From contig NC_043022.1 in assembly GCF_006345805.1 (NCBI RefSeq), positions 13,144,001 to 13,208,000 of the forward strand: a stretch of DNA of 64,000 nt. Direction: 5' to 3'. A model generated the notes under the pieces. The model saw nothing but the letters and a program-made list of their open reading frames with translations, was not told the origin of the DNA and made no database searches. Positions 21,645-63,446 of this stretch are shown here, one piece after another (position 1 is the stretch's first letter; each line of letters begins with the position of its first letter). The DNA is from Octopus sinensis. Its lineage: Eukaryota. The translations under genes and the position numbers were made by a program.

Positions 21645-21870
21645 TAACCCTTTAGCATTTCAACCGGCCACATCCGGCCAAAAGTATTCTGCCTGTTTTA
21701 TGTTCTAACTGGCCAGATCTGGTCTCTCACACTAACCCTACAATATCATTTTAAAAATTAACGGCTACCTCATCAAAATCTCATAGTTACAAGATAATAC
21801 ATAATTAGTTCAAGGCAATGTGGATAAAAAGGATTAATTTGGGCAGAATAGTGTGAACCCTAAAGGGTTA
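21645..21870. mobile_element. TTAA-type MITE, second family (related copies ~25500-25715 and ~50090-50300)
   Basis: TTAACCCTTTAGCATT...CTAAAGGGTTA ends; shared interior with the 25.5-kb copy. Confidence 0.65.
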
Positions 21871-22329: not shown

Positions 22330-22478
22330 TATGATTTCTCCAAACGACTTGAAACGGTCTCTTAGTTCTTGTGTTGTAATCTCTTTCTCCAAGTTACCAA
22401 CAAACAATGTCCGTGTGGCCTTTGGATGATATTCATCACACTCAGCCTCAGGAGGACGGAATTCATTATCTTCAACTT
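22330..22478 (-). CDS. SPEN: SPEN coding exon: N-terminal half of RRM3
   Basis: EVEDNEFRPPEAECDEYHPKATRTLFVGNLEKEITTQELRDRFKSFGEII; HPKATRTLFxGNLEK is diagnostic of the Spen family; ttcccag| acceptor, ATA|gtgagt donor. Confidence 0.97.
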
Positions 22479-23624
22479 CTGGGAATAAAACAGTAAAACA
22501 GAAACATAAAACAAGTTTATTAACCTCTCCAGCATTGGCAACAAGCAAATCTACTACGGACAACTTCAGAAACATAAACACACACTCTCCTTTGTGGCAT
22601 ATATTCACACAAGCTTATAGTTTAAGGGGCCATAATTGTTGGGTTGTTGGCACAACCCTGAACACTTCATGTAAGAAAAAAAAAGGGGAGTAAAGTGGGG
22701 TCTCTCTATATTATTATAACATAATGTTAACCAAATTTTTTGTTGCATGAATAACTGAAAAACATGCCACTAGGAGGTAATCCATTCCAAGCTACACCCA
22801 CATAAATACATGAAATGAGGTTTTATTTGTCCATCTATCAACAGCAAATACATAGATAGATACGTGTGCATATTTTCCCTCTCGTCTTGTTTCTATCAAT
22901 CTATGGTTTATGTTTTTAGCAGAATATGAGAAATGTTATAATTTTCTGTACAAACTATGAAAATCTGAAGCTACAGGAAATGCAAACACGTATCATAATG
23001 GACCATTAGCACATGCTCTCCTAGCCACTTACATACATGCATGGTCTAGTGATGGTTTGTTGCTCAAATTTCAGTTTGGTAAGAGAATGTGTTCCCAGTC
23101 CCTTCATGTGTCGTCTGCTCATGGTCAACTGATCAAATATCAGCTTGTGTGAATTTCATATTCTTCAGAAAAACTGTTCGTTTGATCAATTAGGGAACTG
23201 TTCATACACAAGTACCTCCATTCTACTTCCTTCAAACAAGTAACAAGGCTCAGGGCAAGTTGTTTACCTTTTTTTTACACTCACCATTGCAGTTGCTAAC
23301 AAAATGCAACACACTTCTCACAAGTTTGTAACAGAAATAAATAATTCCTGACGGTACTCAATTATATAGAATTTAAGTTTCCATTACAGTTGACACCCAA
23401 CCTACTGCCAGTATCTATTTACCTGTGTACCTCTACTCATTACCTATTTACTACTTATACCACCACAGAGTTTCTACACAACATCCATATACATCTGTAC
23501 CTCCACACAATATTTTTTTTAAACACTTGTACTTTCATGAGGTGTCTATTCACAACAACTTCACTCCACACATTTCAATACACAACACAACTCAATATAT
23601 TTGTCAAGTAAAGAGACTACTAAC

Positions 23625-23713
23625 CTACACCTTCATGTGCCATAACTTTAATTTTCTTCCCAAAAAACATCTTATCTTGAGAAGCTTCCAAGGCCTTTGC
23701 AGCATCCTCTGGT
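23625..23713 (-). CDS. SPEN: SPEN coding exon: C-terminal part of RRM2
   Basis: ttgcag|A CCA GAG GAT...: (K)PEDAAKALEASQDKMFFGKKIKVMAHEGV(E); donor G|gttagt; 89 nt, phase 2/1. Not in the ORF track. Confidence 0.92.
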
Positions 23714-23936
23714 CTGCAACAGAATGAATTGTACAAAAAGTTTACAAAAAACCCCATAAAACTAAATCGTTTCATTTCAATATTAATGACACAAGATAAT
23801 CATGTAGATATTAAAGGTAATAGGAAAATACAGGTGAATATATGAAGAGAGAAAACAGGAGAAGATTGATGCCAAAGAAAGAAACTGTTAGCAACATTTG
23901 TAAATGAAATTATGGAATAGGGGAAAAGGGACTCAC

Positions 23937-24048
23937 TTTCTAAAACTGACCACAGAATATCGTTCTTCTCCTTGTCCTAGCACCTGCACTGAAGTTACTT
24001 TACCATGCTTTTTGTATTCATGAAAAAGCCCATCCCTAAGGCTAGTAT
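23937..24048 (-). CDS. SPEN: SPEN coding exon: core of RRM2
   Basis: ttttacag|AT ACT AGC CTT AGG GAT GGG CTT TTT CAT GAA TAC AAA AAG = (D)TSLRDGLFHEYKKHGKVTSVQVLGQGEERYSVVSFR, matching SPEN DTSLKDGLFHEFKKFGKVTSV; donor AA|gtgagt; 112 nt, phase 1/2. Confidence 0.96.
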
Positions 24049-24549
24049 CTGTAAAATAAAGCACAAATTAATATTTAATTATAGCAAGATATGCGGACAT
24101 TTGGATTGTCGTAGACCCAAAACAACAAGCCACAACATAGATTCAATTACTCATTTAGACTGATTGAAAATACAAGAAAACATCAATTTCATTTATAATT
24201 AGTGTCACTTAAAGTGTTTAATAAGGTCTTTTAAATTATTCAGTTCCATTTTTTCACTTTAATATAAATTTAACCCTTTGGATATCAACCTGCCCATTGC
24301 TTCTGATACAATTTTTTCTCATTTTAAAATGATCAAAAATTTTAATCTGCCATCAAAATTTCATGTTAGTTTATATTCTAAACAATTTAATAATGACAAA
24401 AGGTACTTTACTAAATTCTACATCATTTTTAAAAAATAATTCATACAAAAGCAGTCTGTTTCAACAGAAATCATTATCATCATCATCGTTTAACGTCCGT
24501 TTTCCATGCTAGCATGGGTTGGACGGTTCGACCGGGATCTGGGAAGCCA

Positions 24550-25041: not shown

Positions 25042-25850
25042 CTACAGAAATAATAGACAAATTTACAGTTATACAATGAAATTATGAGAGTCTTTCTTTT
25101 AAACGTTATTTTCATGTAAAATTTATTGCTAAATCTTGGTAGAAAATTTTTTCCCTTCATATTCAAACTTGATGTCAGCTTAGCCCACTGCATAAAGTCG
25201 CATCTCATTCACCCACAGTTTAAAAAAGCTATTTAGTTAACTCCCTTAGAATACAGAAATGGTTATCTCCCCTATTGCACAGGGGAGGTAAGCCGAGGCA
25301 CAACATTTTTGATTAATTCCCTTGTCTACAAGGGGAGATAACTTATTTAATCGACTGTGGTGGCATTTGAACTCGGATTGTAAAAACGGACAAAATGCCA
25401 CTTTCAATCATGGAACACTATAATATTAAGAGTTTTATTAGTGCTGAATATATGAAGGGCAGCACTGCAGTGATTTTCCGTAGACATAAGAATATATTTT
25501 TACCCTTTAGCATTCAAACTGGTCATATCACACCAAAATATTTCTACAGGTTTTATTTTCAAACTGGCTAGATCTTGCCTCTCACACCTACCCTGCAATG
25601 TCATTCTAAAGTTAAACAATCACATCATTGAAATCTCAAAGATATGATATAATGCATGATTAATTCAAAACAATGTGAATAAATAAGGATTACATTTGAC
25701 AGGCTAAAGGGTTAAAATAGGGACCACATCTGACCCAATAAATATTGCGAACCCGTCATCACTGTAAATTACCCTCATGGCTGATGGAGAGTCCTGATTG
25801 AAAAGAAGAAGAGGAAAGGAGAGAATTCTGGAAAATGTCTTGATAATGAC

Positions 25851-26342
25851 CTTCTGGAATGTGATCTGGACCGACTGCTTCCCGACGAGGACTGACTGTA
25901 ACCACTACTGGAACTAGAGCGCGATCGACTTCGACTGGAGGAACGAGAAACTGATACAGAACCCTTACGTCTGCTGCTATGCCGACTGCTTGCTTGGGAA
26001 TTTGAACATGTCGGTGACAGTGTTGGGACCCGTGGCCGATCAAAACTTTCTCGATCGCTGGCATACTGCTCGTGATAGCGTTCATCAAAGGAATGCTTCT
26101 GCAAACTGCTTGTGATACCACTGGCTGCCGTAGCTACTGTACTGCTGCCTCCTCCACTTACAGGCACTGCACTGCTTTGGTTGACACCAGTACCACTGCT
26201 AACACCACCAGCACTCGTGCTGCCTCCACTAACTGCTGCTGCGGTACCACTCCCTGTACCACTGATAACACTAGCTGCTGCACCTGTGGCGGCGGTGGCA
26301 CCAGACACATTGGCACCGACAGATTTTGGTCGTTGAGCTGCC
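25851..26342 (-). CDS. SPEN: SPEN coding exon: Ala/Gly/Ser-rich then RS/Ser-rich region; 3' boundary uncertain
   Basis: gtattccag|G GCA GCT CAA; open frame ...HSFDERYHEQYASDRESFDRPR...SRSSSRSRSRSSSSSGYSQSSSGSSRSRSHSR; best stop-free phase-2 donor is AAG|gtcatt at 25850 (weak); a competing donor lies at 25772. Confidence 0.8.
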
Positions 26343-26396
26343 CTGGAATACAGAAACAGAGACAATTATTATAGCAACAGGAAAAAGGTAAAACGA

Positions 26397-28321: not shown

Positions 28322-29799
28322 ATTACAGAGTGGGACTGAATCTGAAACCACATGGTTGGATAGTCAACTTCTGGAGCATATAGGAAAGCTTTAGTGAATA
28401 CTTGTTCACAAAATACAGAACATAAAATAGATTTGAACAAGAAGGGACCCACAAGAATAGAAGAGGAAGTTATACACAAAAGAGGGAAGAGTATAAAGAT
28501 ATAAACTGTAGTATATATAGAAAAAGGAGAGGCAAATTGAGGAGGAGAGTAAGGGATTGCTAGGAAAAGGCAAGTGTATAAAGTAGGAGTGTAAAATGGT
28601 ATTTTCAAAGTCGTATAAAGGATTGGTGGTAGAGATTTTTATCATGAAATAAAACTAGTACAAAGAAAGAAATGGAAATAAAAGGAAAGTGCAACCTGTA
28701 CAGTCTAGTGGGTGTGAGATTTCACTTTATCTACCCATGGAAAACACAAAAGCGAGCATCTAAATGGTTAAATGTTGCATGGCTCATTAAATTATGGAAA
28801 TGTGGTTTCCTGTTGTAAAATGCACACCCATGCAGTGACCCACTTTTATGCTTTCCAGGAAATCACGCTTCAAAGTGAAATCACACATGAAAGCATACTT
28901 GTGGCTTCAAAAAAGTTAAGGTACCATGAATTTGAACCAAAGTTGAGAAGTGCAATGTAGGGAATGAGGGAGCTTCAAACAAACAATTTAGAGATTTTCG
29001 CAGAACCAATCATATTTTTCACATTCCTTTTATAGAGTAATTGGAGTTTGTTATACTCCTTACCTGGGATTCATTCACATGACACATCTTATATAGAACT
29101 GAATGGTGTTAAGGAGACACACACACACACACACACAAGAGGGTGTCAGTATGGATAAGTAAGAAGCTTGCTTTGCAACCATACACTTTCAGGTTCAGTC
29201 TCACTTCACAGCACCTTGGGCAAGTTTCTTCTGCAACAGGCCAAGGCCAAGCAATAATTCGTGAGTGAATTGAGCAGACAGAAGCTACGCAAGCAGCTTG
29301 TTGTATATGTGTATGTGGTGGGGAGTCATTTTTATGTCTGTCCCCCCAGTTGTGCCCCCCCCTGCTGTGTTGCCTTTATGTTTACACCATTTCACAACAG
29401 GTGTCTTTGTAACTTAAAGAAGAAAAGCAGAATGATAAACTAGGAAATAAGTATATGGGTAGTTTTAACAGGCTAAACTCTAAGTTATGCATAACATGGC
29501 CTTTGTCTCAAACAACAGAAACTAATAAAAGCAGATATTATGATACTGTGCTTTATAAAGGAGATAACAGAGTGTCGAGATATTTTGCGCCTGTCCACTA
29601 CAGCAGAATTGATACTGGTGCCATGTAAAAAGCACCCAGCACACTCTGTAAAGTGGTTGGCATTAGGAAGGGTACCCAGCCATAGAAACCATGCCAGAAC
29701 ATCTGATGGAACTTCATGGGGTCCCCATCCTAACCAGCTCCTGTCAAGTCATTCAACCCATGCCAGCATGGAAAACAGATGTTGGAGGATTCTTGTGCT

Positions 29800-30155: not shown

Positions 30156-30925
30156 TTGGTGCTGCTGCTGCTGATATATAGGAACAAATAGTATGATAGG
30201 AATGAAATAAAGTTGAGGGAGAGTAGCAGTGGTTATAACTTTGCTGAGAGAGAAGAGAGTTCTTGCTCTGGAGAGAGAGAGAGAGAGAAGGAGAAGGGGA
30301 CAAACAATGAAATGACCCATAAGGAATTAAGAAACGTGCTGATGTGCTGAAAGACTGAAGTGTCAACTGAGCAATGTGAATAGAACAGTTAGTAATAAGT
30401 AGGTCAAGTTCTATACAAATGTGACCTAAATTTATTATATGTCAACTGCAAACCAGACAAAATGGTTTGGAAGGTGGGGGGGGGTCTGGCTGATGTTCTC
30501 CAGAACCCTACACCAAGAATTTCTGATAAATAACGGTAAAGAAGCTCTAGATTTGTAATTTTACTACAAATGGTATACAGAAAATACTGGCATCTGTAAG
30601 TAGAAAAGAGACCTTACAAGGAACAACCCCCACCCCTCGCCTCCCCTGTACAGTGAATTGCAGTGGAATTTAGTCCAAACAAGGTTTTTATTAAGATGAA
30701 AATTCTTAAATGTACTTTGTGGTATCCAATGGATTTAGCACAGTCAAACTTTTTCTAAAATGGTTTTATGATTTTAAGGTTGTGGTTAAAAAATTTGTTT
30801 CTCAACTGCATGGTTGCCGGTTCAGTCCTACTGTTGTGTGACACTTTAGCCAAGTGTCTTCTACTATAGCCCCAGGCTGACCAAAGGCTTGTAAGTGGAC
30901 TTGGGAGATGAAGTCTGAAAGAAGC

Positions 30926-30967
<42 letters not shown>

Positions 30968-40559: not shown

Positions 40560-41931
40560 GTTGGCAATTATATGTTATAATTCCATATTGCTACTGTTTA
40601 CATGTCGCTCAGAGATTTAATATACCTTATTTCCCCCTTTTTTCGAAATTACCAGCAGTTCATAGCTGGAAAAAGCATTTAGTATTTTGCGAGTGGGGTG
40701 GGTTTTCATCACTAGCTGGTGATTAACACATGCTGAGGACGGGTGGTTACCCACCCAGAAACTCGAGTCCGTGTGTATCACATAAGGCTAGGGATGGGAG
40801 TAATGACCACCCCTCGCAAATACTAATCAGACACAGAATGTGTGTCGTTAGCCAGCTGGAAGAGATGTCTTCCTGGGGTTATAAACGCCAGTAGCAATGT
40901 CCCATATAGGACGCCACACTTGGTTGGCAGTTATATGTTACATATATACATATATATCTGTAAAATAATATGTGACAATTATTCAATAGCCAATTTATTT
41001 TACAGATAAATTTCCTCTATTTACATAATATTGGGGTCTCTTTCTTTCTTTTGTTATCATACCGTTTTTACCAATATATATATATATATGTGTGTGTATG
41101 GGTGGGTGTTAGATAGGGACTATAGACATACATGAAACAATATTATTGTCTATGTGGCATCCAGAATATAAATAGCATGAGATTTTCAAGGGAGGTATTT
41201 AGATCATTTCGGCGTTCTCGTTACCATATTTCTGTTTAAATGCACTACCTTTTGTTTCAATTAATTATGGAAACAATGAAGTTTTATCATTATCAAACTG
41301 ATGCTTGTCACAAAAGTTTTGAAGAAGTTTACTTTAAAACAAGGAGTTTGTATCATAGAAACTGGGACAGTCTCATACAGGTTAGTACCAAAAGGGTTAA
41401 ACAGAAGCAAAGACTAAAAACCCCTGCTCTATTGCCCCTTTTGTCCATAGTACCCATATGCCATTTTCTATCACTGCATTTAAGCCTTGTTAATGCTTCA
41501 TACTCATATACTGGCCCTTATTAACCATCTACATTGGGACTACTTTATAAAGAATAGCTTTAGGAATAACGGTCCCTATCTGGCCTACAAAAGCTTAATG
41601 AGCTTGGACATCTCTGATCTACATCTCACCAGAGACAAGGAGGTATGACTCAGTGTTAGAGATTACAGATGTGTACATAGGCAGTATATATATATCATCA
41701 TCATCATCGTCGTTTAACGTCCGTTTTCCGCGCTAGCACGGGTTGGACGGTTTGACCGATATATATATATATATATACTAAACTTTTTTTTTAAACTTTT
41801 TTTATTTGTTTCAGTCATTCGACTGTGGCCATGCCGGAGCAGCGCCTTTAGTCGAGCAAATCGACCCCAGGACTTATTCTTTGTAAGCCTAGTACTTATT
41901 CTATCGATCACTTTTGCCGAACCGCTAAGTT

Positions 41932-41985
<54 letters not shown>

Positions 41986-44900
41986 TGCATGCACACACAC
42001 ACACGCACAAACACAATTGCAGCATGGAAGAAGTTTATAAGCCATTTAAAGACACACAAAAACCGCTAGATTCACTTCAACATTTAAATTTAATTTGTCA
42101 AAATTAAGAAAAAAAAGATAGTCATAGCTACCATTGGTGAGTTGGCACAACTCAAACACGTGTGTATGCATATAACATCTGGGACATGATGCAGCTCTGT
42201 GGGTCACTGAATCCTGGGGGGGGGTAGAGAGATGGCCATGTTGTCGTGCGTGTGTAATGTGTATGTTGGCGTTTAATACATATACATACGGAGAGGGAGA
42301 GATGGGGGTGGGCAAGAACGCTAAGTAGAATTTTGAGGATATTGTCACAACTCCAAGCAAATATATAAAGTAGACCGTTGAGCACATTGTCACAAAGAAA
42401 GACATGACAAATCCATATTCTATAAAGTCAGCCCAGACTGGATTTGAACTCAGAACATAAGGAAACCTGATTAGAATAGCACAATGCATCCTGACATCCA
42501 CTTTACTGTTTCTGACATCGACCGCTCAAGAATAATGAGGGATTACCAATTAGAATAATGCGTATCAAATAACAAGGGATTTACCAATTAGAACAATGTA
42601 TCAAATAATTAAGTAGTTGACTATTGTATGACTAACTTTGTAGTTATGGTAACTTAGATCGGAGAGAGGGGGGATCAATAATTATGGGGAGGGGTAAAAT
42701 TTGGGTTCGCTTTTTAATTAAGTAAGAGGAAATGGAGAAATAGTGACTAATACGTTTGATGATAAACAATTTTGCAAAAACAAAAAATTGATTGGTGTGA
42801 TTTTTTGGGGGGCTTTTTTTAAAATTTCCCCCACAATCAAGTTTTTACATCACCCAATATAGCCCCCACCATCACCTCCATACACATACATCAGCCTCTA
42901 ACCCTCATCTACCATCACCCCAAAATACATGAGCCATGACTTCCACCGACCACCACCCCGTAATTAGTTGTCCCATATAATGTGTAATACAAAAAAATAG
43001 TTCTATTACCATTTATCCCCTGTAAAATGTGAAGTAAGGTACTGCCTGCCTCTGAATGTTGTCACCAAATTAACACATTAATTAACCCGGTTACTCTCAA
43101 AGCTGGAAAGTTAAAGCAAAATCTTGGTGGAGGGAAAGAGAGGGGCAAATTAAAGCAACACTGTCGCAACCTTATATTTAATACCAACTCTTCCTCAGAG
43201 TTTGTCATCATTTTAGCATCCACTTTTCCATGCCCGCATGAGTTGGCTGGAATTGGTTGAGGCAGATTTTCTACAGTTGGATGCCTTTCCTGTCACCAAC
43301 CCCCATCTGTTATAGTTCATCAATTAAAGACAGAATCAGTAAAATGCCAAACAGTTACCTCATTTCTCTTTATAACAAGCTCAAATCCTGCTCCGACTGA
43401 CTTTTATTTTTCATCAACCAAACTCTTGTGATCCATTATTATCACTTTCAATAAGTCTATTCTCACCCACCTCTGCCTGCATTCAGTCTTCATCAACTCT
43501 TCCTATATCTTCCTCGTTTCATTTCTTTCTACCCTTCACACACACCCTCCACATTCAATACTCATTTCTCAGACCAAGCAACATCATGCTTTTTACACAA
43601 GCATCATAAAATCTGCCTCTCACCCAGAGGAACAATCCCTTCAGTACCAGCAGAGGTAAATAGTTCCTGGAACGTTTTCTACTCTATTCTTATCCAGTCT
43701 TCAAAACACACACACACACACACACACACGGTTTCCATCAACTAAATTCATCCCCAAGACATTGTTCAACCTGGGGCTACAGTAGAGGCCACTTGCCAAA
43801 GTTGCAGCGCAGTGGGACTGAACCCTAAGCCAAATGGTTGCAAAGCAAACTTCTTAACCACACAGCCGTACCTACACCTTTTCTATTCGTACATTGAGAG
43901 CATTCTAGCCACTGCTAATTAGGTCACCTAGGTAACAGAAGCCATCGTTTAGTTATAAGGAGCCAGCAAAATATTTAGAAGAATCTATTCTAAGGCTGCT
44001 GTTATGGCTAGTTTTTCCTTTTCTACATACGAAACAGCCCCTTTCCTTTGGTTTGCCTGTGTTCCCAGTAAACACGTGTTCATAGTTTACACTTAAGACA
44101 CTACAAGGAAAATCAATATAAAACCTGAATTTAATCATCATCATCATCATCGTTTAACGTCCGTTCTCCATGCTAGCATGGGTTGGACGGTTCGACCAGG
44201 GATCTGGGAAGCCAGGAGGTTGCACCAGGCCCAGTCTGATCTGGCAGTGTTTCAATGATGATAATCACGGCAACTTAGCTAAAGTTTTAGGAGAGGAGGT
44301 TAGTCAATTACATCGATCCCAGTGCCTAACTGGTACTTATTTCATTGACCTCAAAAGGATAAGCAAAGTTGATGTCAGCAGAATTTGAACACCTCGGAAA
44401 GTAAAGACAAAAGAAATGCCACGAAACATTTTGTCCAGCATGCTAACAATGTATCATCATCATTTTCAACATCCATTATTCTATGCTTGCATGAGCCAGA
44501 CAGAGTTTACTGAGGCAGGTTTTCTATGGCCAGATGCATTTCGTGTTGTTAAATCCTCACCTGTTTCCAAGCAAGGTAATAATTTCCCCATGGCCAGGTA
44601 TGTTTCCATGGAAGACTTGGAAACGAATAACACTGCTTGTATGAACGTGACACAGATAGACGTATATACATCAGGCTTCTTTCAGTTTCTGTCTACCAAA
44701 TCCACAAGGCTTTTGTTGGCCATGTGTGTGTGTGCTTGTACGAGCCATGTCCTAGCTGTTATAATAAGCAAAAGTACCATTCCAAATATAAAAACAACAA
44801 CACTGTAATGTAGGTGACATTTAAAAAGAGACCAGAACTGATTATTGACTAAAATGACTCAAATGACAAGAATTAACTTTATTCATTACTTCACAGAAGA

Positions 44901-47900
44901 AGCTGATGTAGCTGGGGATCAGATCAGCATGTTTAGAAAAAAATTATGCAGTTTTGTTTGGAAAAAAAGCAACAAACAATTGCTACTGTCTTGCCAAAAT
45001 AATGCTTTTACCATTTTCCTTTTCCTTGTGTCAGTCATTGGGCTCTGACTATGCAGGGAGCATTGCTTTGAAGGGTGTAGTTGGGCAAATTGATTCCGGT
45101 ACATTGGTCTCTTTCGCCAAACAAGCATTGGCTACGAAATGGTGGTAGGAAATATACATAAAGACACACGCAAAAAATCACAGTTTCCACCTACAAGATT
45201 CACTCAAAAGCCATTGGTCTTGATTCAGGATTAGAGTGAAATCACTTGCCCAAGGAACCAAGCAGTGGGAGTGAAACTGAAACCCCATGGTTGCAAAGCA
45301 AGCTTTTTAGCCACACAACCATGTCTAATGACATCGATTGGACCAATCAGCCATGTAAAGCATTCCAAAACCCCAAAATCTGCACACACAGAAATAGACA
45401 GACTGGAGTGATGTTGATTACTAATGGCAACAATGCAGTTGTGTAAAGAGTGGGATACTTGGGTCACAGGCAAATGGCTTATGGCAATGTAAATAAGGGA
45501 TTCGACTAAGACATTAAAAAAAGGGGCTTGAAAACTATTTGGGAGTTCTTTAAAGACAAGCAACGATGAAGATGAAAGCAATTCTCTTACATTATCATCA
45601 CTTGAATTCTCTAATTTCTTCACCATACAAATGATATTTGAGGTCAACTAATTCTAACAGTATCAATACAATGTTAATCATACAAAGCAGGGGTTGGCAT
45701 TTTTTCTTTTTTTATATCATTGGCCTTTGTCATGAAATCATTAGTAACTTAAAAGCCTGCCCACCATCATGAAAGATTTCTAAAATAAAACTAAAAAGCA
45801 TAGTTAATAAAAATAATTTCTTGATTTAAAAAACAATAATTCCTTCATTTTTTGTGTTGTTACTGATTTAAAGAAAATATCAAATGAAATTGATAAAGAT
45901 AAATAATTAAAAAATCAGTCATATTGATACAGTTGAAATATTTAATGTGAAATACATGTTTGGTAAATATTAGTTATTATTGCATTGATATTTGGCTGGA
46001 AATTCGTGAGTTTTAGCCTTAAAATTATCCCAAGTCTTCTAGATTCCCTTCACTAATGGTCAAAATTGTTTCAATCCCCTATATAGTCACATAGGCCCCT
46101 AAGGGCCAATATCAATCACTTTGCTGAACCTTGAATATAAGGTAAATATAGTATTAGCTAATGTGTAGTCTTAATCAATCATTGGTACTGATCAAAGGGA
46201 CATTTAGAAGGGGAGTTTAAAACTAGTTGAGAGTGAATAAAAGGTGAACATTAAGGGGAATGAGATTCTAGGGGTTCCTGCTTCTCATGATACCAATACT
46301 AAAGTTGGTATCAGACACATTCTAGAAACATATAAGAACACTCGCATTCAAAGCTCTTAATAGATTCATTTTATAAGGTTTGAAACAGGAGAACGACAAA
46401 AAGATTTAATGCCACAAAATATTTGGTTTCTGTAAAGACAAAATATTCATTTTCATCTAATTAACAATGATAATTCTTTTTAAAATGTATCACGATAAAA
46501 TATCATCATCATCATCATAATTTGACATCCATGTTTTCTGTGCTGGTATGGGTTGCATGGTTTGATATGATCCAATGGACACAAGGACTGCATTGTGTTC
46601 CAGTGTCTGCCTCAACAGGGTTTCTACAGTTGGATGCCCTTCCTGATACTAACTACTTTACAAAATGTATTGGATGGGGCTTTTTTCATGCCACCAATTG
46701 CCATCTAGCTTGCAAGATTATGAACCTAAAGGGACAGCTTTATGCTAGGAGATGAGAGGTACAAAATGACCATAAAAAAATATGTAAACTAAGAGCAAAT
46801 CATTAGGAAGTTTGTTTCATAACAAACTTGTGGTTCAAACTTTGGTATTACGACACAGAACTTACTGAAGTCCCTTCTACTTATGGTCTCAACCGTTTTG
46901 AGTAAACAGAAACTGTACTGAAGCCCATCATAGTGTGTATGTGTGTGTGTAAGAGAGAGAAAGAATGATATCGCCCTTTAAAAAAAATCAATGTTCTGAC
47001 AAAAAAAAAATTAACTCAGCTATTGAATAGGATAGGGATCACCAAAATATGGGGTTTGATATAAATTGACTAACCCCACTAAACTGGTGCCCCAGGATGG
47101 CTGCAGTCTAACGAAACCATTGAAAGAATAAAATGCATGTGTGTGTGCACGCACAGGCACACACACTTTGCAGGATATTTTATCAACAGAAGAACAAGAA
47201 TCTAAACACATCAAGTTTGTTTTTGTGTCCCATTGAAAACTAACGACTCTAGATGTAGCTTTGCCGTTCTCAAGATGAAACAACTTCGAAGTTGTATGTA
47301 AGGTTTGTAATTTCATACAAGAGACTAATCAAAAGAGGAAACACCAATTTATAACAAGATAACAGTCTGGTACTTCACCGAGACACGTTGGAATAAATGG
47401 GAAATATTCCACAACAAATTACTGTATTTTATTTCTCTACAAGCTGCTCTATTTTATATTTGATATTAACAGAAAAATTGGGCTGCAACTTATACAAATG
47501 GTAAAGCTAAAACTATGAAGGAAAAATGTTTTGCACCAACACTGAACATTAAATAGGGGTGGACTTATACACAAGTAAACATGGTATCTTGGGTAGTAGG
47601 GGAGCCAGTGAGGGAGCCTCTACATGATTGCTTAACCTACCACAAGTAACAGTCAAATTTCCCTCAAATCACATGCCACTAGCTTACAAAAAAGAACATG
47701 TTGGATGTGGCCGTAGATTTCTTACACCATAGTAAAGAGATGAGATGGCCATGGGTAGGTAGGATACCTGTTCGATCAGATCTAACCTGGGGCTAAATAA
47801 CATTAATCTAGAGTAGAAACCTGAAACCAAACTCAACTGGAAGTCCAGTTCAGTACGGACTCAGTTATCTAACATCAGTAAGCTCAAATCAGAAAGCGAT

Positions 47901-50649
47901 ACCAATACATGGCTTTCAGTTTAGACCAAGGATTCTCAACTGTTTCTGACCTCTGAACCCTTTTGATTCCTATTTTGCTAGGGTGGACCCTCATAGCCAT
48001 TTGCTGTTTAAAAAGTTCTATTGTATTTTTATTATTAATATTATTAGGAATTATATTTTTTTAAATTGTGAAAATATTTTATGTATTGTACAAGTATAAG
48101 CAATTTATTGAGAGATAAATTATAACAACAAAATCTTACAATGGATCCCAGTTGAGAACCATTGGCTTAGACAATGGTAGTGAACCTGACATAGGACAAT
48201 AGAGCAGGCGAGGAGTATGATTTATAGTACAGACTAGTGTTGGTTACTTTTGCTTGAATAGAATGATGACACCCAATTAATCAAAGTGCTAATTAATGTC
48301 ATGCTCTCCTATCATGTTAAATATCATCGTTGTCATCGTCATGGGTTTAACGTGCACTTCTCCATGCTTGCGTATCTCGGATGGAATTCGTTGAGGCAAA
48401 TTTCCTAATCAAATGTCCCTTCTTTGTCGTCAACCCTTACTTGCTTCCAAGGAAAATAATATTTCCCTATGGCTAGACATTTTCATGGAAGCCCGAAAAT
48501 GAATAACACTGCTTATTATATGATGGTTATGCTCATTTAGAACCATCACATATCAAGACAAGGATACGTACATACACACAAACTTGTTTCAATTTCCATC
48601 TCCCAAATCCACTCACAAGGCTTTGGTCGACCTGGGATATAACAGAAAGCATATGTCCAAGGTGCCATGCAATGGGACTGAACCCAAGACCACATGATTG
48701 GGAAGCATACTTCTTAACGACACAGCTATGCCTGTAGGGAGAACAAAAATCTATAGAGATTTTTACAGGAAACTTCTGTGTCTACCTGATTAAGTTTAGT
48801 AATAACTTTGTGGCGAAGGCTTCGTAAATAACTACTTAAATGAAACCTCTAAAATATCAGAAAATACTTAAACCCTTACAGTGTGAACAGATGCAGTATT
48901 ATTGTGGTTCCAGGGAAAATTGAGAGGGCCCCATTTCACTCTCTTGGCTCAAAGATATTGGCATTGGTTAATGAGTGACTTAGCGGTACAAGAGCTAACA
49001 ACCAGCTAGAAATAATAGACAAATCTTTCTGAAATCTTTGAGAAATGAAGCCAATTTTATTTCTCATATCTCTCCACAGTCAATAAGATTAAGATACCAG
49101 TGAAGTAATGAGGGTTGATGGTACTGAGTAACTAACCCCTTCCCTCAAAATTGCTGGTCTTATGCCTAAATCAGAAACCATTATTTGTTATATTTTCTGT
49201 TTCCTCTAAAAATGATACACTGTTAGAATTCTTTACTGATTCAAGTTTAATGTAAAACACACTAGTCATTACCCAGGCACAATGTTCACAGTGTGTGTGT
49301 GTGTGCACGCGCATGCATACGCATGTGCTCACTAAACATCAGTAGAAATGTGGTCACAACACCACCACCACCCATCCCAAACCCTACAGAAATTTCCTAG
49401 CAACATCAATACAATTACTAATGTATTTTATCAATTTGGGGCTGTTTCACTATATCTATAGATGTGTGCATGCATGTATCACTACTGTGCTCAGATAAGG
49501 TATTGCTTTGTCTTCCATACCTCCATAATCATAATAACAAGTATTAATAATCCTAATTTTCTTTAATTTGCCCCAATGGCTCAAGATGTTTGGAGACAAT
49601 ACAAATACAAAGGTGAAATAGAAAAAGGAAACCAAGAAATGGTGAGGCAGGAAGTTACACAAAGTAAAAAAAAAAAAAAGACTAGTGAGTTAACCAACAG
49701 CAATGAAGACACATTAATTAATTAATTAATTAATAGCAACAAAGAACCACAAAACAAGTAAGGATCATCTAAAATGAAGGGCAGGGACCAACAGAATAAT
49801 TCGAAGCATTTTACGTCCAACAACAGATTGTCCTACACACCAAACAAGTGCCGTTTTTTTATTTCTTGCCACAAACTAAAAGTCACGCTATTAATGTAAC
49901 TAATTTAACCATGTTAATTTAACTAGTACCTCCCCACCCCCTCTCTTTCTCTTTTACTTTTCTCTTCAATATGATACCTGAAGTATCATATTTGATGGCA
50001 TAAAAGACCCACTCCATTTCCAGGAGTATGTATGCAATACTAAACTTTGAGACCTTTTTTTTTTTTTATCATTATCATCATCATCAACGCTTCAGCATTC
50101 CAAATTATTCTGTCAAATGTCATCCTTATATATTCACATTGTTTTGAATTAATCACGCATTATCTTGTAGCTTCAAGATTTTCATAATGTGATTGCTTAT
50201 TTTTAGAAGGACATTGTAGGGTAGGTGCGAGAGGCTGGATCTGACTGGTTTGAACATTAAACAGGTTGAATATTTAGGCCAGATATGGCTGGTTTGACCA
50301 CAGAAAAACTGAGAAAATCTTCAATGTGTCAGACAAAATGCTAATTAGTGGTATTTCTTTCAGCTCTTTACGTTCCGAGTTCAAATACCACCGAAGTCAA
50401 CTTTGCCATTCATCCTCACGGGGTAAATAAAATAAAGTATCAATCAAATACTGGGGTTGATGTAAATCTAATTAACTAACTCCCTTGACCCTAAAATTGC
50501 TGGCCTTATGCCAAATTTTGAAACAGTTATTATTATTATTATTATCATTATTATTATTAGTTTTCAGTCATACCAATCCAAACTGTTACAATGAAACAGA
50601 GGAATTGAGTATGTGTCCTTTACAACATTAAATAAGTTATAACATTAAT

Positions 50650-50684
<35 letters not shown>

Positions 50685-51372
50685 ATGTATACACAGGGGA
50701 AATGGGCAACAGAAAGCAGGTAGTGAAACAACACACTGCTGTTGTTGTTGTTGTTGTTGTTGTTATTAATAGATGTTCCAACTGGCAATAATTAAATCAG
50801 AAAATCTGAATGTGCTGATCAATAAACGGACGATGGAGAAAATAGAATCAGAAAGAAGAGATTTAAGCAGGCCATTGGAATCTGTCCAAATATCCGCATG
50901 TGGTGGTGGTGGTGGCTGCCAGTAGTTGTGATGACGACGGCAGACGACGAAGCCTTGGAATCCAAATTACAAGTGCAGAGGAGGAGGGTGGGTGGCAGTT
51001 GGTTATTAAAGGCATAGATGCATATAGACAGGCACACACACACACAAATACACACAATATAGAGATATATAATGCATGCGTACATGGACATACATAGATA
51101 TACATGTGAGTGTATGCATGTATGTATATATGTGTGTGCGTGTAACCCATGCTAGCATGGAAAACGGACGCTAAACGATGATGATGATGTGTATGTATAT
51201 ATATGTGTGTATGTATATATATATATGTATATATGTGTATATGCATATATATATGTATATATATATATATGTGTGTATGTATATATATGTGTATGTATAT
51301 ATATATGTGTATGTATATATATATATGTATGTATATATATGTGTATGTATGTATATATATATTATGTGTATG

Positions 51373-51445
<73 letters not shown>

Positions 51446-52057
51446 ACGTGTGTATCTGTAGAATCAGTAGTTTTAATCACCATTACACACTAAATTTGCA
51501 TGATATCTGGAATCCATGTCATGACTACAATAGGAGGCCTGATAAAACAGCTGTTGTTACAAGCTGTGACCATCCCCGTCAAACGTTGTCATATACTAGC
51601 TACAAAATATGTAACCGCTGATAAACAAAAAAAAAATCGAAAGAAAAAACAAACAAACAACAACCACAATTTCCTCAACAAATGACATAACTGGAACCTG
51701 AATTTGCTGAAGTGTCTACTACTATTACTACTACCACAAGACAAGAGAAATGGTGGTAGTGGTGGGGGCTAATGATGACAATGATGATGATGATGGTGAT
51801 GATGGTGATATCAGCAGTAGCTTGGCTTAAGTAGGGTGCAGCAGTGGTAACAGTATAAAGATAAAGGTTGAGGAATAGAGAGGAAGGTGCAGTCGTTTTC
51901 GGGGAAACAATGTCGGATGTTATCAATGGAGGCCAATAAGAAAATTTTAGGCATTAATATTTCAGCAGAAAAAAGTTGTTATTGCCAACAGTTTGAGAAA
52001 TATTTACTAAAATAAACACAAAGAGTCAGGTAGTTAATTAGGTGGAAGCCACAAATC

Positions 52058-53957
52058 GGTTAATATAGGGCGTAACAAATATCAGAAAATCAAAAAAAAA
52101 ATGTGTGTAATAGGTGTAAAACAACTTCCTATGAACGAATATGAAAAAAAAAATTCGCGCACGCGAAAGGGGGGTGGGGGAGAGGCCTCGGAAAATTCAC
52201 ATCGGGAAGTTCCGAAAGCGTCTGAGGAGCTGACCCGGGCACCAAAACAAAAAAAAAATAGTGTAATATGTGTAAAACAACTTGCTCTAAACGAATATGA
52301 CAAAAAAAAATGCGCTCTCGCGAAAGAGGGGTGGGGGAGAGGCCTCGGAATATTTATATCGGGAATTTCCGAAAGCGTCTGAACCGGGCACAAAAACAAA
52401 AACAAAAACAGCGTAATAGGTGTAAAACAACTTGCTCTAAACGACTATCATGAAAAAAATGCGCGCTCGCGAAAGGGGGGTGGGGGAGAGGCTTCGGAAA
52501 TTTCACATCTTCAGTCCACGGCCTTTAAACTAAGAAAAAATAGTGTAATTGGTGTAAAACTACTTGTTCTAAACGAGTATCAAGAACACACACTCACACA
52601 TGAATCATAAACTCCGTATTTCGCAAAAAAAAAAATAAAGAGAAGAAATTCTGGAAAAAGTGAAGAAATGTTGGATCTCATTCCTTGGTTAAAGCTATTT
52701 TAAACATTAAATTTATGCTTTTTTTGAAATAGTTCAGATATATGCAATTCTTCTCACTTATTAAGATGCATTTATCAGAAAAAAAGAGACAGAAAAAATT
52801 ATTATTTTGTGTCAATCCTTCCCTAATTATCCTTTATTAATTAGTTTTGGCGTGTATTTTTTTCCCAAATTTATTTTTTCACCTTTACAACACTGTTTAG
52901 TAAAGCAATTAATTATCTTTATAATTTGCATATTTGACTTATTAATCAAAATTCTCTAGATGTAATATATACTAAGTAATGCATCCTTCATTTATGTGTT
53001 CCGTTCTGTATTATGCATGCGTGACTGTTTGTATGTAAGTGTGTTTAACTGTGCACATGAATGTGAATATTAAAGAACATATTTATTTACTATGATTGTT
53101 ATTTTCAGAACAAATAAATCTTTTGGCTGTTATGTTATTGATGTTATTATTATTGCTAGTTAAAGGGTGGTGACTTGGCTGAATATTTTGAGTCTTGTAG
53201 TATGTAGTTGTGTTAGTCAATATTCTGAGTTCAAATCCAACTCATTTCTTTATCATCATTATCGATGGACCACTCAAAGAGGTATGTATACATTATCATT
53301 TTCGTAACATAATTTCTGTAGTATTTCAAGATGTTTCTGACACGTATTTTGATTCACATGGCGGAGATCCAACATTTCTTCACTTTTTTTTTTGCGAAAT
53401 ACGGAGTTTATGATTCATGTGTGAGTGTGTGTTCTTGATACTCGTTTAGAACAAGTAGTTTTACACCAATTACACTATTTTTCTTAGTTTAAAGGCCGTG
53501 GACTGAAGATGTGAAATTTCCGAAGCCTCTCCCCCACCCCCCTTTCGCGAGCGCGCATTTTTTTCATGATAGTCGTTTAGAGCAAGTTGTTTTACACCTA
53601 TTACGCTGTTTTTGTTTTTGTTTTTGTGCCCGGTTCAGACGCTTTCGGAAATTCCCGATATAAATATTCCGAGGCCTCTCCCCCACCCCTCTTTCTCGAG
53701 AGCGCATTTTTTTTTTCATATTCGTTTAGAGCAAGTTGTTTTACACATATTACACTATTTTTTTTTGTTTTGGTGCCCGGGTCAGCCCCTCAGACGCTTT
53801 CGGAACTTCCCGATGTGAATTTTCCGAGGCCTCTCCCCCACCCCCCTTTCGCGTGCGCGAATTTTTTTTTTCATATTCGTTCATAGGAAGTTGTTTTACA
53901 CCTATTACACACATTTTTCTTTTGATTTTCTGATATTTGTTACGCCCTATATTAACC
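52058..53957. mobile_element. Foldback-type non-autonomous DNA transposon, 1.9 kb, ~600-bp modular terminal inverted repeats, exact TSD
   Basis: Ends GGTTAATATAGGGCGTAAC...GTTACGCCCTATATTAACC; CACAAATC duplicated at 52050-52057 and 53958-53965; arms ~52058-52680 and ~53364-53957 are near-identical reverse complements; AT-rich spacer with no convincing ORF. Confidence 0.9.
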
Positions 53958-54196
53958 CACAAATCATGAGAAAGGACAGTGAGCTTTCATGCTTCTTTCT
54001 TTCTTTGTCTGGAGCCAAACTTAGGTTTTAGATAGGAAGGGAGGGGGGAAGTTCTTTGTTTAGTGAAAGAGACCAAGGTCAATACAGTTAATATATATAT
54101 ATATATACAAGGGTACAACCAATGTGTGTTTGTAATATGTCTGAAGTACAGTTAGCATATATGCCTGCAGTTCTTTAATAAATATATAATATATAT

Positions 54197-54231
<35 letters not shown>

Positions 54232-54437
54232 TCTCTTTTCTCTTTTACTTGTTTCAGTCATTTTGACTGTGACCATGCTGGAGCACCGCCTTTAATCGAG
54301 CAAATCGACCCCGGGACTTATTCTTTGTAAGCCTAGTACTTATTCTATCGGTCTCTTTTGCCGAACCGCTAAGTGACGGGGACGTAAACACACCAGCATC
54401 AGTTGTCAAGCAATGCTAGGGGGACAAACACAGACAG

Positions 54438-54468
<31 letters not shown>

Positions 54469-54630
54469 CATATATACGACAGGCTTCTTTCAGTTTCCGT
54501 CTACCAAATCCACTCACAAGGCATTGGTCGGCCCGGGGCTATAGTAGAAGACACTTGCCCAAGATGCCACGCAGTGGGACTGAACCCGGAACCATGTGGT
54601 TGGTTAGCAAGCTACTTACCACACAGCCAC
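54232..54630 (-). mobile_element. tRNA-derived SINE, family C, apparently full length
   Basis: Reverse complement starts GTGGCTGTGTGGTAAGTAGCTTGC...GGTTCAGTCCC (A/B boxes); partial copies at ~22080-22230, 30790-31010, 41800-41930, 43720-43870, 48590-48730, 63220-63385. Confidence 0.8.
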
Positions 54631-62459: not shown

Positions 62460-63446
62460 AATATGTCCATAGTACAGGTGAAACATGCCTATACTATATA
62501 CATATGCCAAAGGTAGTCCAGCTACTATGTCTACAGTTTGGTTAAAATATGTCCAAGGTGCAAATAATGCATTCTATAGCAAGGGTGCATTTAGTTAAAA
62601 TGTTACTTTAACAGTTGAAGTACATCTACAGTATAGCATTACAAGTAATATATGACCACAATACAGTAATTATACACCTGTATTTTATACAGTCAACATA
62701 TATGTAGAAAACAGTTAATCCATGTTTACAATATAGAAAATATCTGCAGTAAGAGCTCATGCGTCTGAAATATATCTATGTCTACAGTACAGCAATTATA
62801 TCGATACTAGAGTCCGTATATGCATCAAGCATTGAAACCTATCTATAATGCAGCTATTCAATATATGTTGTCTCCTAAATTTCTCATGTAACACTGATAT
62901 TTCTGTAGTTCAGCTAATGCATTATATAACACGCAGATACGACAGGTGTTCGTTATTGATAATATGTATAATACAGTCAATATGTATTGGCATCGTCATT
63001 GTTTTAACATTCTCTTTTCCATGCTTGCATGAATCAGACAGAGGAAGTGTTTCTATAGCCAGATGTCCTTTCTGCTGCCAATCCTCGCCTGCTTCCAAGC
63101 AAGGAAATATTCCCCAACGGCTAATTGGGCCCAGACAGGTTTATGCCGAATATTGGAAATGAACATCACTACATATGATGGCAAGACAAGAATGGACAGA
63201 TGAACATGGGGACAGACACACAGACACACGATGGGCTTCTTTCAGGTTCCATCTACCAAATTCACTTACAAGGCTTTGACTGGCTCAGAGCTATACTAGA
63301 AGACACCCATCCAAGCTACACATTGGGACTGAGCCCCAAAAACCATATGGTTGCAGACAATAAAATTCTCAGTCACACAACCACACCTGTACCTGTGATG
63401 ACATTATATATATACATACATATTTTATATACATACATACATATTT

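What the first reader, a model, noticed from the sequence alone, without database searches (positions are those of the whole stretch)
52050..53965. Young foldback transposon with ~600-bp modular inverted arms
This 1,900-bp element has perfect GGTTAA...TTAACC ends and an exact 8-bp TSD (CACAAATC; 9 bp CCACAAATC if the last C is assigned to the target). The arms differ by only a few substitutions, homopolymer lengths and one ~23-bp indel, and the ~680-bp spacer is non-coding. Long modular TIRs are typical of Foldback/MULE (9-bp TSD) and Galileo/P-like elements. I do not recognise this family, so it may be undescribed. High arm identity implies recent mobilisation or arm homogenisation, and so a possible autonomous partner.
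Basis: partly seen in the sequence, partly recalled or inferred. Interest (0 to 1): 0.7.

Follow-up and report, generated by a model that had tools for sequence, protein, structure and literature searches.

The report
Non-autonomous Merlin transposon with foldback arms
This is a real 1.9-kb non-coding "cut-and-paste" transposon with two near-identical 600-bp inverted arms in an animal (probably octopus) genome, and related copies elsewhere place it in the known Merlin superfamily, not the Foldback/Mutator or P groups, so it is tidy but fairly ordinary.

Summary
Window 52058-53957 is a 1,900-bp element with perfect GGTTAATATAGGG... inverted ends. It is flanked by an exact 8-bp direct repeat, CACAAATC (9 bp if one C is shared). 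The arms are 622 and 594 nt and 99.5% identical. Each holds about 3.5 tandem subrepeats of roughly 150 bp. The 684-bp middle has no coding capacity.

It is a non-autonomous foldback-type DNA transposon, but the superfamily is most likely Merlin (IS1595-like DDE transposase), not MULE/Foldback or P/Galileo. One arm reading frame hit two proteins in a 1.8-billion-protein library. Their contigs carry homologous subrepeat arrays (blastn E 4e-26 and 3e-40). In one contig, L010, the array starts with the same GGTTAAT at the collinear position and runs straight into a decayed Merlin transposase C-terminus (Pfam PF12762). The closest relative of that remnant, in L014, lies in an internally deleted Merlin with GGTTAT ends and an 8-bp duplication. 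GG termini and 8-9-bp duplications define Merlin.

I found no autonomous copy with these arms, no second copy in the window and no empty site, and the source genome could not be searched. Merlin is already reported as abundant and recently active in octopus. Verdict: new member of a known kind, modest interest.

The parts
52050..52057 (.). Left target-site duplication, CACAAATC (9 bp, 52049-52057, if the terminal C is assigned to the target)
   Evidence: Read directly. Chance of an 8-bp match is 2.5e-5.
52058..52679 (+). Left inverted arm (TIR), 622 nt, starting GGTTAATATAGGGCGTAAC
   Evidence: 591 of 594 aligned bases are identical to the reverse complement of the right arm.
52058..52094 (+). 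Outer (terminal) domain of the left arm. It carries the GG terminus and the GGTTAAT heptamer shared with L010.
   Evidence: Element position 1 is collinear with L010 position 290.
52095..52532 (+). Three tandem subrepeats: U1 52095-52250, U2 52251-52400, U3 52401-52532 (the last is truncated). Conserved blocks are GTGTAATAGGTGTAAAAC...AACGAATATGAAAAAA and TGCGCGCTCGCGAAAGGGG..GGGGGAGAGGCCTCGGAAA.
   Evidence: Alignment A1 with units from L010 and L011.
52533..52586 (+). Partial fourth subrepeat (first conserved block only)
   Evidence: (families D3/D4).
52587..52679 (+). Inner domain of the left arm. It is unique sequence and includes a 20-bp imperfect tandem duplication at 52637-52675, which accounts for the 25-bp indel between the arms.
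52680..53363 (.). Middle domain (spacer): 684 bp, 28% G+C, non-coding. It has no similarity to the arms, to the rest of the window or to the related loci.
53364..53957 (-). Right inverted arm (TIR), 594 nt, ending ...GTTACGCCCTATATTAACC. Approximate layout: inner domain 53364-53431, partial unit 53432-53485, three units 53486-53920, outer domain 53921-53957.
53958..53965 (.). Right target-site duplication, CACAAATC

Best explanation
The element is a non-autonomous, internally non-coding member of the Merlin superfamily of DDE cut-and-paste DNA transposons, and it has a foldback-like architecture.

**Shown**
- It is a discrete insertion bounded by perfect inverted ends and an 8-bp (possibly 9-bp) target-site duplication.
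- Its arms are built from an outer domain, about 3.5 subrepeats of roughly 150 bp, and an inner domain, around a non-coding middle.
- Homologous subrepeat arrays exist in at least two other loci from related hosts.
- In one of those loci the array begins with the same GGTTAAT and adjoins a decayed Merlin transposase C-terminus.

**Inferred**
- A Merlin (IS1595-like) transposase encoded elsewhere in the genome recognises the GG-terminal sequence. It probably also binds the conserved blocks repeated in every subrepeat, which would act as multiple binding sites.
- That transposase excises the element and re-inserts it across a staggered 8-9-bp cut. Repair of the stagger creates the flanking duplication.
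- The family arose from autonomous elements by internal deletion. L010 looks like an intermediate that still keeps the 3' part of the gene.
- The two arms are 99.5% alike while neighbouring subrepeats within an arm are only about 84% alike. So the subrepeat array is old, and the arm-to-arm identity is recent. Either this copy or its master is young, or the arms are kept alike by gene conversion or hairpin-templated repair within the element.

The insertion lies at least 25 kb upstream of the SPEN-like coding exons. Nothing suggests a function for the host.
For: **Real insertion.**
- Perfect ends and an exact 8-bp duplication.

**Merlin's non-coding hallmarks are met.**
- The ends start with 5'-GG and the duplication is 8-9 bp.
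- The defining features come from PMC8101967: TIRs of 24-462 bp, conserved terminal GG, 8- or 9-bp duplications, a DDE_Tnp_IS1595 transposase, and "all other Merlin families" start with GG.

**Link to a Merlin transposase.**
- The arm reading frame 52101-52379 hit P0027 (E 1.1e-4) and P0028 (E 7.2e-4) among 1.84 billion proteins.
- The C-terminus of P0027 matches PF12762 DDE_Tnp_IS1595 at 40.5 bits, above the cut-off of 27.
- Contig L010, which encodes P0027, has this layout:
  - GGTTAATTTGCAGCGTTAC at position 290;
  - three subrepeats of about 170 bp;
  - then directly ...GSIIYSDSWAAY...VNHSQNFVDP...HTQTIERLW..., the Merlin D and E blocks;
  - 23 nt at the contig end that read as the reverse complement of the subrepeat G-rich motif.
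- The window arms align to L010 (E 4e-26, 67-71% identity over 260-450 bp) and to L011 (E 3e-40). The alignment puts the element's first base opposite the L010 GGTTAAT.
- Twelve subrepeat units from the three loci align with shared conserved blocks.

**An independent Merlin relative has the same kind of ends.**
- The closest relative of the remnant, P0029 (68% amino-acid identity), lies in L014 inside an 1,157-bp internally deleted Merlin. That element has 131-bp TIRs starting GGTTAT and an 8-bp duplication, AAGGAGGG.

**Host context.**
- L011 carries the same SINE family as the window.
- Merlin is reported as unusually abundant in Octopus bimaculoides (191 sequences; PMC8101967).
- Octopus vulgaris has 18 Merlin families, 2 of them recently active (PMC13282606).
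Against: - No full-length Merlin with these arms was found. The superfamily link rests on one short metagenomic contig (L010, 1,662 bp) whose right arm is represented by only 23 nt. A chimeric assembly, or a Merlin relic that merely lies inside an unrelated foldback element, cannot be formally excluded.
- The relatives are only 66-74% identical to the window arms.
- No second copy, no empty site and no copy-number estimate could be obtained, because the source genome is not in any searchable collection.
- The 622-nt arms are longer than the 462-bp maximum quoted for Merlin.
- An 8-9-bp duplication and long TIRs with subterminal repeats also fit animal MULEs (Muta1 makes 8- or 9-bp duplications; PMC5225508).
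- A MULE/Foldback family (Tm1) has the end motif CGGTTAA (PMC3169594), so GGTTAA alone does not discriminate.
- The terminal 33 nt are not significantly similar to the subrepeat core. Multi-site transposase binding is therefore an inference.
Confidence: 0.72

Rival explanations
1. It is a Foldback element of the Mutator (MULE/Phantom) superfamily. A FLYWCH/MULE transposase would mobilise it and make 8-10-bp duplications.
For: - Most described foldback elements are assigned to Mutator.
- Tetris has the same layout of outer domain, tandem repeats, inner domain and middle domain, with 8-10-bp duplications (PMC4079207).
- Muta1 gives 8- or 9-bp duplications and has long TIRs with subterminal repeats (PMC5225508).
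- Tm1 has a terminal CGGTTAA motif (PMC3169594).
- The element itself has a G-initial terminus and an 8/9-bp duplication.
Against: - The only homologous arm array found next to any transposase sequence adjoins a Merlin (PF12762) remnant, not a MULE one.
- An independent Merlin relative has GGTTAT ends and an 8-bp duplication.
- No MULE domain was found in the element.
Confidence: 0.13
2. It is a foldback-like derivative of the P superfamily (Galileo-like) or of hAT, both of which can make 8-bp duplications.
For: - Galileo shows that long, internally repetitive TIRs evolved in the P superfamily, and that the repeats carry extra transposase (THAP) binding sites (PMC3688188 and PMC3573991, listed; cited in PMC4079207).
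- An 8-bp duplication fits hAT and the P element (from general knowledge).
Against: - Galileo makes 7-bp duplications.
- P-type ends start CA... and hAT ends start YARNG (from memory; Yuan and Wessler 2011 could not be read). Here the ends start GGTTAA.
- Re-registering the ends on the internal TAGGG leaves flanks that are reverse complements of each other, not direct repeats (read).
- The relatives link the arms to Merlin.
Confidence: 0.04
3. It is a foldback transposon whose transposase superfamily is still unknown. The Merlin remnant in L010 would be a coincidental passenger (a nested or captured relic, or an assembly chimera).
For: - Foldback middle domains are variable and often hold unrelated DNA (PMC4079207).
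- L010 is a single short contig, and its right arm is only 23 nt.
- L011 has the subrepeat array without any transposase sequence or a recognisable GGTTAA end.
Against: - The remnant sits between the two arms in the position expected for an internal deletion derivative.
- The element meets both non-coding Merlin criteria on its own (GG ends, 8-9-bp duplication).
- The nearest relative of the remnant carries GGTTAT ends.
Confidence: 0.09
4. It is not a mobile element. It would be a local inverted duplication (palindrome) of a tandem-repeat block, made by replication or repair error.
For: - There is only one copy in the 64-kb window.
- No empty site is available.
Against: - An exact 8-bp direct repeat abuts the point where inverted complementarity ends.
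- Homologous arrays lie in different flanking contexts in other loci.
- A transposase remnant is associated with one of them.
Confidence: 0.02

Closest known systems
Merlin superfamily (Feschotte 2004; IS1595/IS1016-related DDE transposons), including the families reported in Octopus
   Same: - 5'-GG termini, an 8-9-bp target-site duplication and long TIRs.
- Internal tandem repeats occur in several Merlin families (PMC8101967).
- A homologous-arm relative (L010) retains a DDE_Tnp_IS1595 remnant.
- Merlin is abundant in O. bimaculoides and recently active in O. vulgaris (PMC8101967; PMC13282606).
   Different: - This copy encodes no transposase.
- Its 594-622-nt arms exceed the 462-bp maximum quoted.
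- The arms make up 64% of the element, which gives a true foldback architecture with subrepeats of about 150 bp. The Merlin papers I could read do not describe that.
Tetris (Drosophila virilis foldback element) and Drosophila Foldback/Tm1 (Mutator/Phantom-linked)
   Same: - The same four-part anatomy: outer TIR domain, tandem subrepeats (220 bp in Tetris, about 150 bp here), inner TIR domain and a non-coding middle domain.
- 8-10-bp duplications and no autonomous copy known (PMC4079207).
- Tm1 has a terminal CGGTTAA motif and 9-bp duplications (PMC3169594).
   Different: - Those families are assigned to Mutator, Tm1 by a FLYWCH/MULE transposase.
- Here the only transposase sequence linked to the arms is Merlin-type.
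- I know of no sequence similarity to them, and this was not tested because their sequences are not held.
Galileo (P superfamily, Drosophila)
   Same: - Long TIRs with internal tandem repeats that resemble Foldback.
- The repeats carry secondary transposase-binding sites. That is the model I use for the conserved subrepeat blocks.
   Different: - Galileo has 7-bp duplications, CA-type ends and a THAP/P transposase.
- None of these is seen here.
Internally deleted Merlin in L014 (ENA ERZ26858995, ctg126575)
   Same: - GGTTA- terminus and an 8-bp duplication.
- Loss of the transposase N-terminal part, with the remnant starting at the same IYSD block.
- Tandem repeats lie upstream of the remnant.
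   Different: - Its TIRs are only 131 bp.
- There is no sequence similarity to the window's arms or subrepeats.
- Its repeats are about 60 bp and lie inside the element, not in the TIRs.

Membership tests
Merlin superfamily | Target-site duplication of 8 or 9 bp | tested here: met
   CACAAATC at 52050-57 and 53958-65, with an alternative 9-bp reading. Criterion from PMC8101967.
Merlin superfamily | TIRs begin with conserved 5'-GG | tested here: met
   Both ends read GGTTAATATAGGG.... Criterion from PMC8101967.
Merlin superfamily | A DDE_Tnp_IS1595 transposase is encoded by the element, or by an autonomous family member that shares its TIRs | tested here: inconclusive
   The element itself codes for nothing and the window holds no Merlin gene. 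L010, whose arm is homologous at 66-71% and starts with the same GGTTAAT, keeps a PF12762 remnant. No intact gene between the same TIRs was found.
Merlin superfamily | TIR length within the reported range (24-462 bp) | tested here: not met
   The arms are 622 and 594 nt. This is a descriptive range from the first survey, not a mechanistic limit.
Foldback-type elements (structural class) | Very long TIRs that make up most of the element, with internal tandem subrepeats, outer and inner domains, and a short non-coding middle | tested here: met
   The domain scheme is that of PMC4079207.
Foldback/MULE (Phantom) family | Mobilised by a MULE (FLYWCH + MULE domain) transposase, with autonomous relatives that share the TIRs | tested here: not met
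   No MULE domain in the element. The only transposase sequence linked to homologous arms is Merlin-type. The source genome could not be searched, so this is absence of evidence plus contrary evidence.
Foldback/MULE (Phantom) family | Target-site duplication of 8-11 bp (usually 9) | tested here: met
   8 or 9 bp. Ranges from PMC6446971 and PMC5225508. This feature does not discriminate MULE from Merlin.
Galileo / P superfamily | 7-bp (Galileo) or 8-bp (P) duplication, CA-initial termini, and a THAP-domain transposase with binding sites in the TIR repeats | tested here: not met
   The duplication is 8/9 bp and the termini start GG. No THAP or P domain was found. The terminal consensus is quoted from memory.
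hAT superfamily | 8-bp duplication together with short TIRs that start YARNG | tested here: not met
   The duplication length fits, but the termini are GGTTA and the arms are about 600 nt. The consensus is quoted from memory.
Any transposon family | Several copies with different flanks, and empty sites in the same or sister genomes | not testable with these tools
   There is one copy in the window. The source genome is absent from the searchable collections. Diverged relatives in other flanks exist (L010, L011).

The most novel reading that the evidence does not exclude
Merlin would be a third DNA-transposon superfamily, after Mutator and P, to have evolved a true Foldback architecture independently. 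In this reading, an octopod lineage of Merlin elements carries nucleosome-sized (about 150-170 bp) CpG-rich TIR subrepeats. Their blocks are conserved across hosts and act as arrays of transposase-binding sites. The family is still mobile, and such arrays could seed satellite DNA, as Tetris does in Drosophila.
Probability: 0.3. Interest if true: 0.45.

Novelty: new member of a known kind. Interest (0 to 1): 0.3.

Why it matters
- **Annotation.** Classifiers would probably label this structure "Foldback/MULE" or "unknown TIR". The evidence here lets it be assigned to Merlin. It also gives a concrete terminal sequence and subrepeat consensus for finding the rest of the family and its autonomous source in cephalopod genomes.
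- **Mobile-element biology.** Foldback architecture would then be a convergent end-state reachable from yet another transposase superfamily. The conserved subrepeat blocks are testable candidates for Merlin transposase binding sites, and nothing is known biochemically about Merlin transposition.
- **Host genome.** A 1.2-kb near-perfect palindrome is a potential site of fork stalling, hairpin RNA production or ectopic recombination upstream of a SPEN-like gene. There is no evidence of any such effect.

Tried and rejected
**Searches that found no further copies**
- Other copies in the window: the terminal 28-mer and 15-mer, the subrepeat core, and blastn of the whole element and both flanks all found none.
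- The arm ORF 52082-52405(-) against the 5.8-billion-protein index gave no hits. An exact look-up of a 50-aa arm ORF was not on record.
- Exact-pattern scans: viral contigs three times and genome contigs found nothing. The metagenome-contig scan gave one hit, L001, which is a chance match with unrelated flanks.
- Looking for an autonomous partner: the last protein search, with the L010 remnant, gave only four short Merlin fragments. L014-L017 have no similarity to the arms.

**Structural ideas tested and dropped**
- Similarity of the terminal domain to the subrepeat core, to argue for reiterated binding sites, was not significant against shuffles (p about 0.08-0.5).
- TTAA as the real duplication (piggyBac or Kolobok style) was rejected. 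It would leave the 8-bp direct repeat unexplained, and the ends would then start TATAGGG.
- A hAT-style registration on the internal TAGGG was rejected. The flanks would then be reverse complements, not direct repeats.
- CpG richness as an age marker: observed/expected CpG is 1.26-1.30 in the arms against 0.46 for the window. The diverged arrays in L010 and L011 are also CpG-rich (1.13-1.33), so it is a family property, not proof of youth.

**Host and literature checks**
- Organism identification: the SPEN exons found only relatives (closest is 93% amino-acid identity, with exon DNA 79-88% identical), from Logan runs without organism names. Run accessions and SINE sequence strings are not in the paper library. 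The octopod assignment rests on my recollection of the SINE and on context.
- Rfam and tRNA scans of the window found nothing.
- The Yuan and Wessler 2011 table of duplication lengths and termini could not be read.
Full report

Yes. The sequence shows a 1,900-bp element at 52058-53957. Its first 28 nt, GGTTAATATAGGGCGTAACAAATATCAG, recur only once in the 64-kb window, as the reverse complement at its other end (0 expected in shuffles).

The 8-mer CACAAATC lies directly outside both ends, at 52050-57 and 53958-65. Inverted complementarity stops exactly at that junction. Because the right end finishes in C and the base before the left copy is also C, a 9-bp duplication (CCACAAATC) is an equally legal reading. 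The chance of an 8-bp match at a fixed place is 2.5e-5 with the window's base composition. Only 3 of 62,084 positions in the window carry an identical 8-mer at that spacing.

A gapped alignment of the arms gives 622 against 594 nt. There are 591 identities, 3 substitutions (99.5%), three 1-bp indels and one 25-bp indel. The 25-bp indel coincides with an imperfect 20-bp tandem duplication in the left arm.

Each arm contains about 2.8 full copies plus a partial fourth copy of a 149-157-bp unit. The 684-bp middle (28% G+C) has no ORF longer than 67 aa. A six-frame Pfam scan of the whole element found nothing. With the loop shortened, the arms fold as single-stranded DNA into a hairpin that is 95% paired.

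**2. Surroundings**

The window is animal nuclear DNA.
- Exons of a SPEN / Msx2-interacting-protein-like gene (RRM domains) lie on the minus strand at about 20.3-24.1 kb, with probable further exons either side.
- The element lies at least 25 kb upstream of these exons, in microsatellite- and SINE-rich DNA.
- From memory, the SINE next to the element (54236-54620) and its ten or more copies in the window look like the abundant octopod SINE. This is not a tested identification.
- There are no tRNA genes and no Rfam families.
- No second copy of the element, its spacer or its immediate flanks occurs in the window.

**3. Finding relatives**

DNA scans of the public collections found nothing useful, and one arm reading frame found nothing in the word-indexed protein database.

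The opposite-strand arm frame (52101-52379) was scored against 1.84 billion representative proteins. It gave two hits, P0027 (E 1.1e-4, two stretches) and P0028 (E 7.2e-4). Both are gene calls made on eukaryote-like DNA.

*L010.* P0027 lies on L010, a 1,662-bp ENA metagenome scaffold. P0027's N-terminal two-thirds are translated subrepeats. Its C-terminus is a Pfam PF12762 DDE_Tnp_IS1595 domain (40.5 bits against a cut-off of 27), which is the Merlin-type transposase. The DNA reads, in order:
- a (CA)n(TA)n microsatellite and unique flank;
- GGTTAATTTGCAGCGTTAC at position 290;
- three subrepeats of about 170 bp;
- immediately afterwards, ...GSIIYSDSWAAYHLIGNLVYTHFQVNHSQNFVDPTNSSIHTQTIERLWGSIK, an in-frame stop, then ...RYLKQYLSRFVF... 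This is the second-D and E blocks and the C-terminal tail of a Merlin transposase, now a pseudogene;
- about 500 bp of unique DNA;
- at the contig end, 23 nt that are the reverse complement of the subrepeat's G-rich motif, where an inverted right arm would begin.

*L011-L013.* P0028 lies on L011-L013 (Logan runs SRR11869385/391/394). L011 has six diverged subrepeats of about 165 bp. They are preceded by a copy, about 80% identical, of the same SINE family as in the window.

*Homology of the arms.* blastn of the window element gives E 3e-40 to L011 and E 4e-26 to L010 (66-74% identity over 260-520 bp, both arms). The alignment is collinear, so the element's first base falls on the L010 GGTTAAT. 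A 12-unit alignment (A1) shows two strongly conserved blocks:
- AGTGTAATAGGTGTAAAAC-ACTTGCTG-AA-GAATATGAAAAAA;
- TGCGCGCTCGCGAA-GGGG-GGGGGAGAGCCCTCGGAAAGTTCAC.

**4. The transposase side**

The L010 remnant retrieved four Merlin fragments. The best, P0029 (68% amino-acid identity by tblastn), lies on a 313-kb eukaryote-like contig (L014), beside a 2,241-aa Helentron-type ORF. It sits inside an 1,157-bp internally deleted Merlin. That element has 131-bp TIRs (97% identical) whose ends read GGTTATCCTTAAGG..., and it is flanked by the 8-bp duplication AAGGAGGG.

So an independent, bona fide Merlin relative has the same first five bases and the same duplication length as the window element. L014-L017 share no DNA similarity with the window arms. 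The window contains no Merlin coding sequence. No autonomous partner was therefore found.

**5. What it is and how it most likely works**

*Definition of Merlin.* The superfamily is defined by a DDE_Tnp_IS1595 transposase, TIRs of 24-462 bp with a conserved terminal 5'-GG, and 8- or 9-bp duplications. Several families have internal tandem repeats (PMC8101967).

*How the window element compares.*
- It meets the two non-coding criteria outright.
- Its arm sequence is homologous to an arm that still adjoins a Merlin gene remnant.
- I therefore read it as a non-autonomous Merlin element with foldback architecture (confidence about 0.7).

*Shown:* the insertion signature, the modular anatomy, homology to arrays in other loci, and the physical link of one such array to a Merlin remnant.

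*Inferred:*
- mobilisation in trans by a Merlin transposase that binds the GG terminus;
- probable binding to the reiterated conserved blocks as well, by analogy with Galileo's secondary THAP sites (cited in PMC4079207);
- integration across a staggered 8-9-bp cut;
- origin by internal deletion, with L010 as a plausible intermediate.

*Age.* Units within an arm are about 84% alike while the two arms are 99.5% alike. The subrepeat array is therefore old and the arm identity is recent. That means either a young copy or homogenisation within the element. The data cannot separate these.

CpG observed/expected is 1.26-1.30 in the arms against 0.46 for the window. The diverged arrays of L010 and L011 are also CpG-rich, so this is a family trait and not a clock.

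**6. Rivals**

- *MULE/Phantom Foldback.* This is the serious alternative. Most foldback elements are placed there. Animal MULEs such as Muta1 make 8- or 9-bp duplications and have long TIRs with subterminal repeats (PMC5225508). Tetris has the same four-domain layout (PMC4079207). Tm1 even has a terminal CGGTTAA (PMC3169594). Against it, no MULE sequence is associated with these arms, whereas a Merlin one is.
- *P/Galileo and hAT.* Both are disfavoured by the GG termini (terminal consensus quoted from memory). Galileo is also disfavoured by its 7-bp duplication.
- *Coincidental passenger.* The Merlin remnant in L010 could be a coincidental passenger or an assembly chimera. L010 is one short contig, so this remains possible (about 0.09).
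- *Non-mobile palindrome.* A local palindrome that never moved is very unlikely, given the exact duplication and the homologous arrays in different contexts.

**7. Novelty and verdict**

Merlin is reported as unusually abundant in Octopus bimaculoides (191 sequences; PMC8101967). A 2026 annotation of O. vulgaris lists 18 Merlin families, two of them recently active with 11 insertions (PMC13282606). Long TIRs and internal tandem repeats are known in the superfamily.

What I did not find described is a Merlin element with full foldback architecture: arms of about 600 nt making up 64% of the element, built from subrepeats of about 150 bp. No paper in the library combines foldback elements with cephalopods. 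Repbase and Dfam could not be consulted, so the family may already be catalogued.

I rate it a new member of a known kind, with modest interest (0.3).

Noticed in passing
window 54236-54620; partial copies at 41759-41930, 16286-16503, 30809-30966, 48564-48685, 63220-63351, 43731-43838, 29192-29314, 44656-44721, 22081-22183 and 45181-45284: An abundant SINE-like dispersed repeat. It has two halves separated by a CA/TA microsatellite, and one half is tRNA-like (…GGGACTGAACCCGGAACCATGTGGTTGG…). From memory it resembles the very common octopod SINE. A copy about 80% identical heads the related contig L011. Rfam and ARAGORN report nothing for it.
   Followed up: partly
window about 20355-24052 (minus strand), probably also 25775-26365 and the K/R/S-rich region 1-8000: Exons of a SPEN / Msx2-interacting-protein-like gene with RRM domains. 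The closest database relative is only 93% identical in one exon, and exon DNA is 79-88% identical. The source species itself therefore seems absent from the protein collection.
   Followed up: partly
L010 about 784-800 and L014 about 10215-10230: Two unrelated internally deleted Merlin copies both lose everything upstream of the same transposase block (…IIYSD.W…). In both, tandem repeats abut that point: 170-bp TIR subrepeats in L010 and repeats of about 60 bp in L014. This could be a coincidence, a deletion hotspot or a shared exon boundary.
   Followed up: no
window 52058-52679 and 53364-53957 compared with the flanks: The arms have CpG observed/expected of 1.26-1.30, in a genome region at 0.38-0.46. 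The spacer is at 0.54. The homologous arrays in L010 and L011 are also CpG-rich. This suggests constraint on the CGCG-containing motifs, or escape from methylation.
   Followed up: partly
L014 10781-17506: A 2,241-aa ORF lies immediately beside the deleted Merlin copy. It carries Helitron_like_N, PIF1, OTU and Exo_endo_phos domains, which is a Helentron-type rolling-circle transposon protein.
   Followed up: no
window 51187-51441 and 54178-54231: Long compound TA/CA/(ATGTGTATGTATATATAT)n microsatellites bracket the insertion region. Similar tracts produce the many spurious '[12 protein letters not shown]' ORFs across the window.
   Followed up: no
window subrepeats, e.g. 52176-52199 and 52152-52168: Each full subrepeat carries small palindromes: TTCGCGCACGCGAA / TGCGCGCTCGCGA, and CGGGAAGTTCCG / CGGGAATTTCCG (a GGAA-N-TTCC core). 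The first is conserved in L010 and L011. The second is replaced there by other sequence.
   Followed up: no
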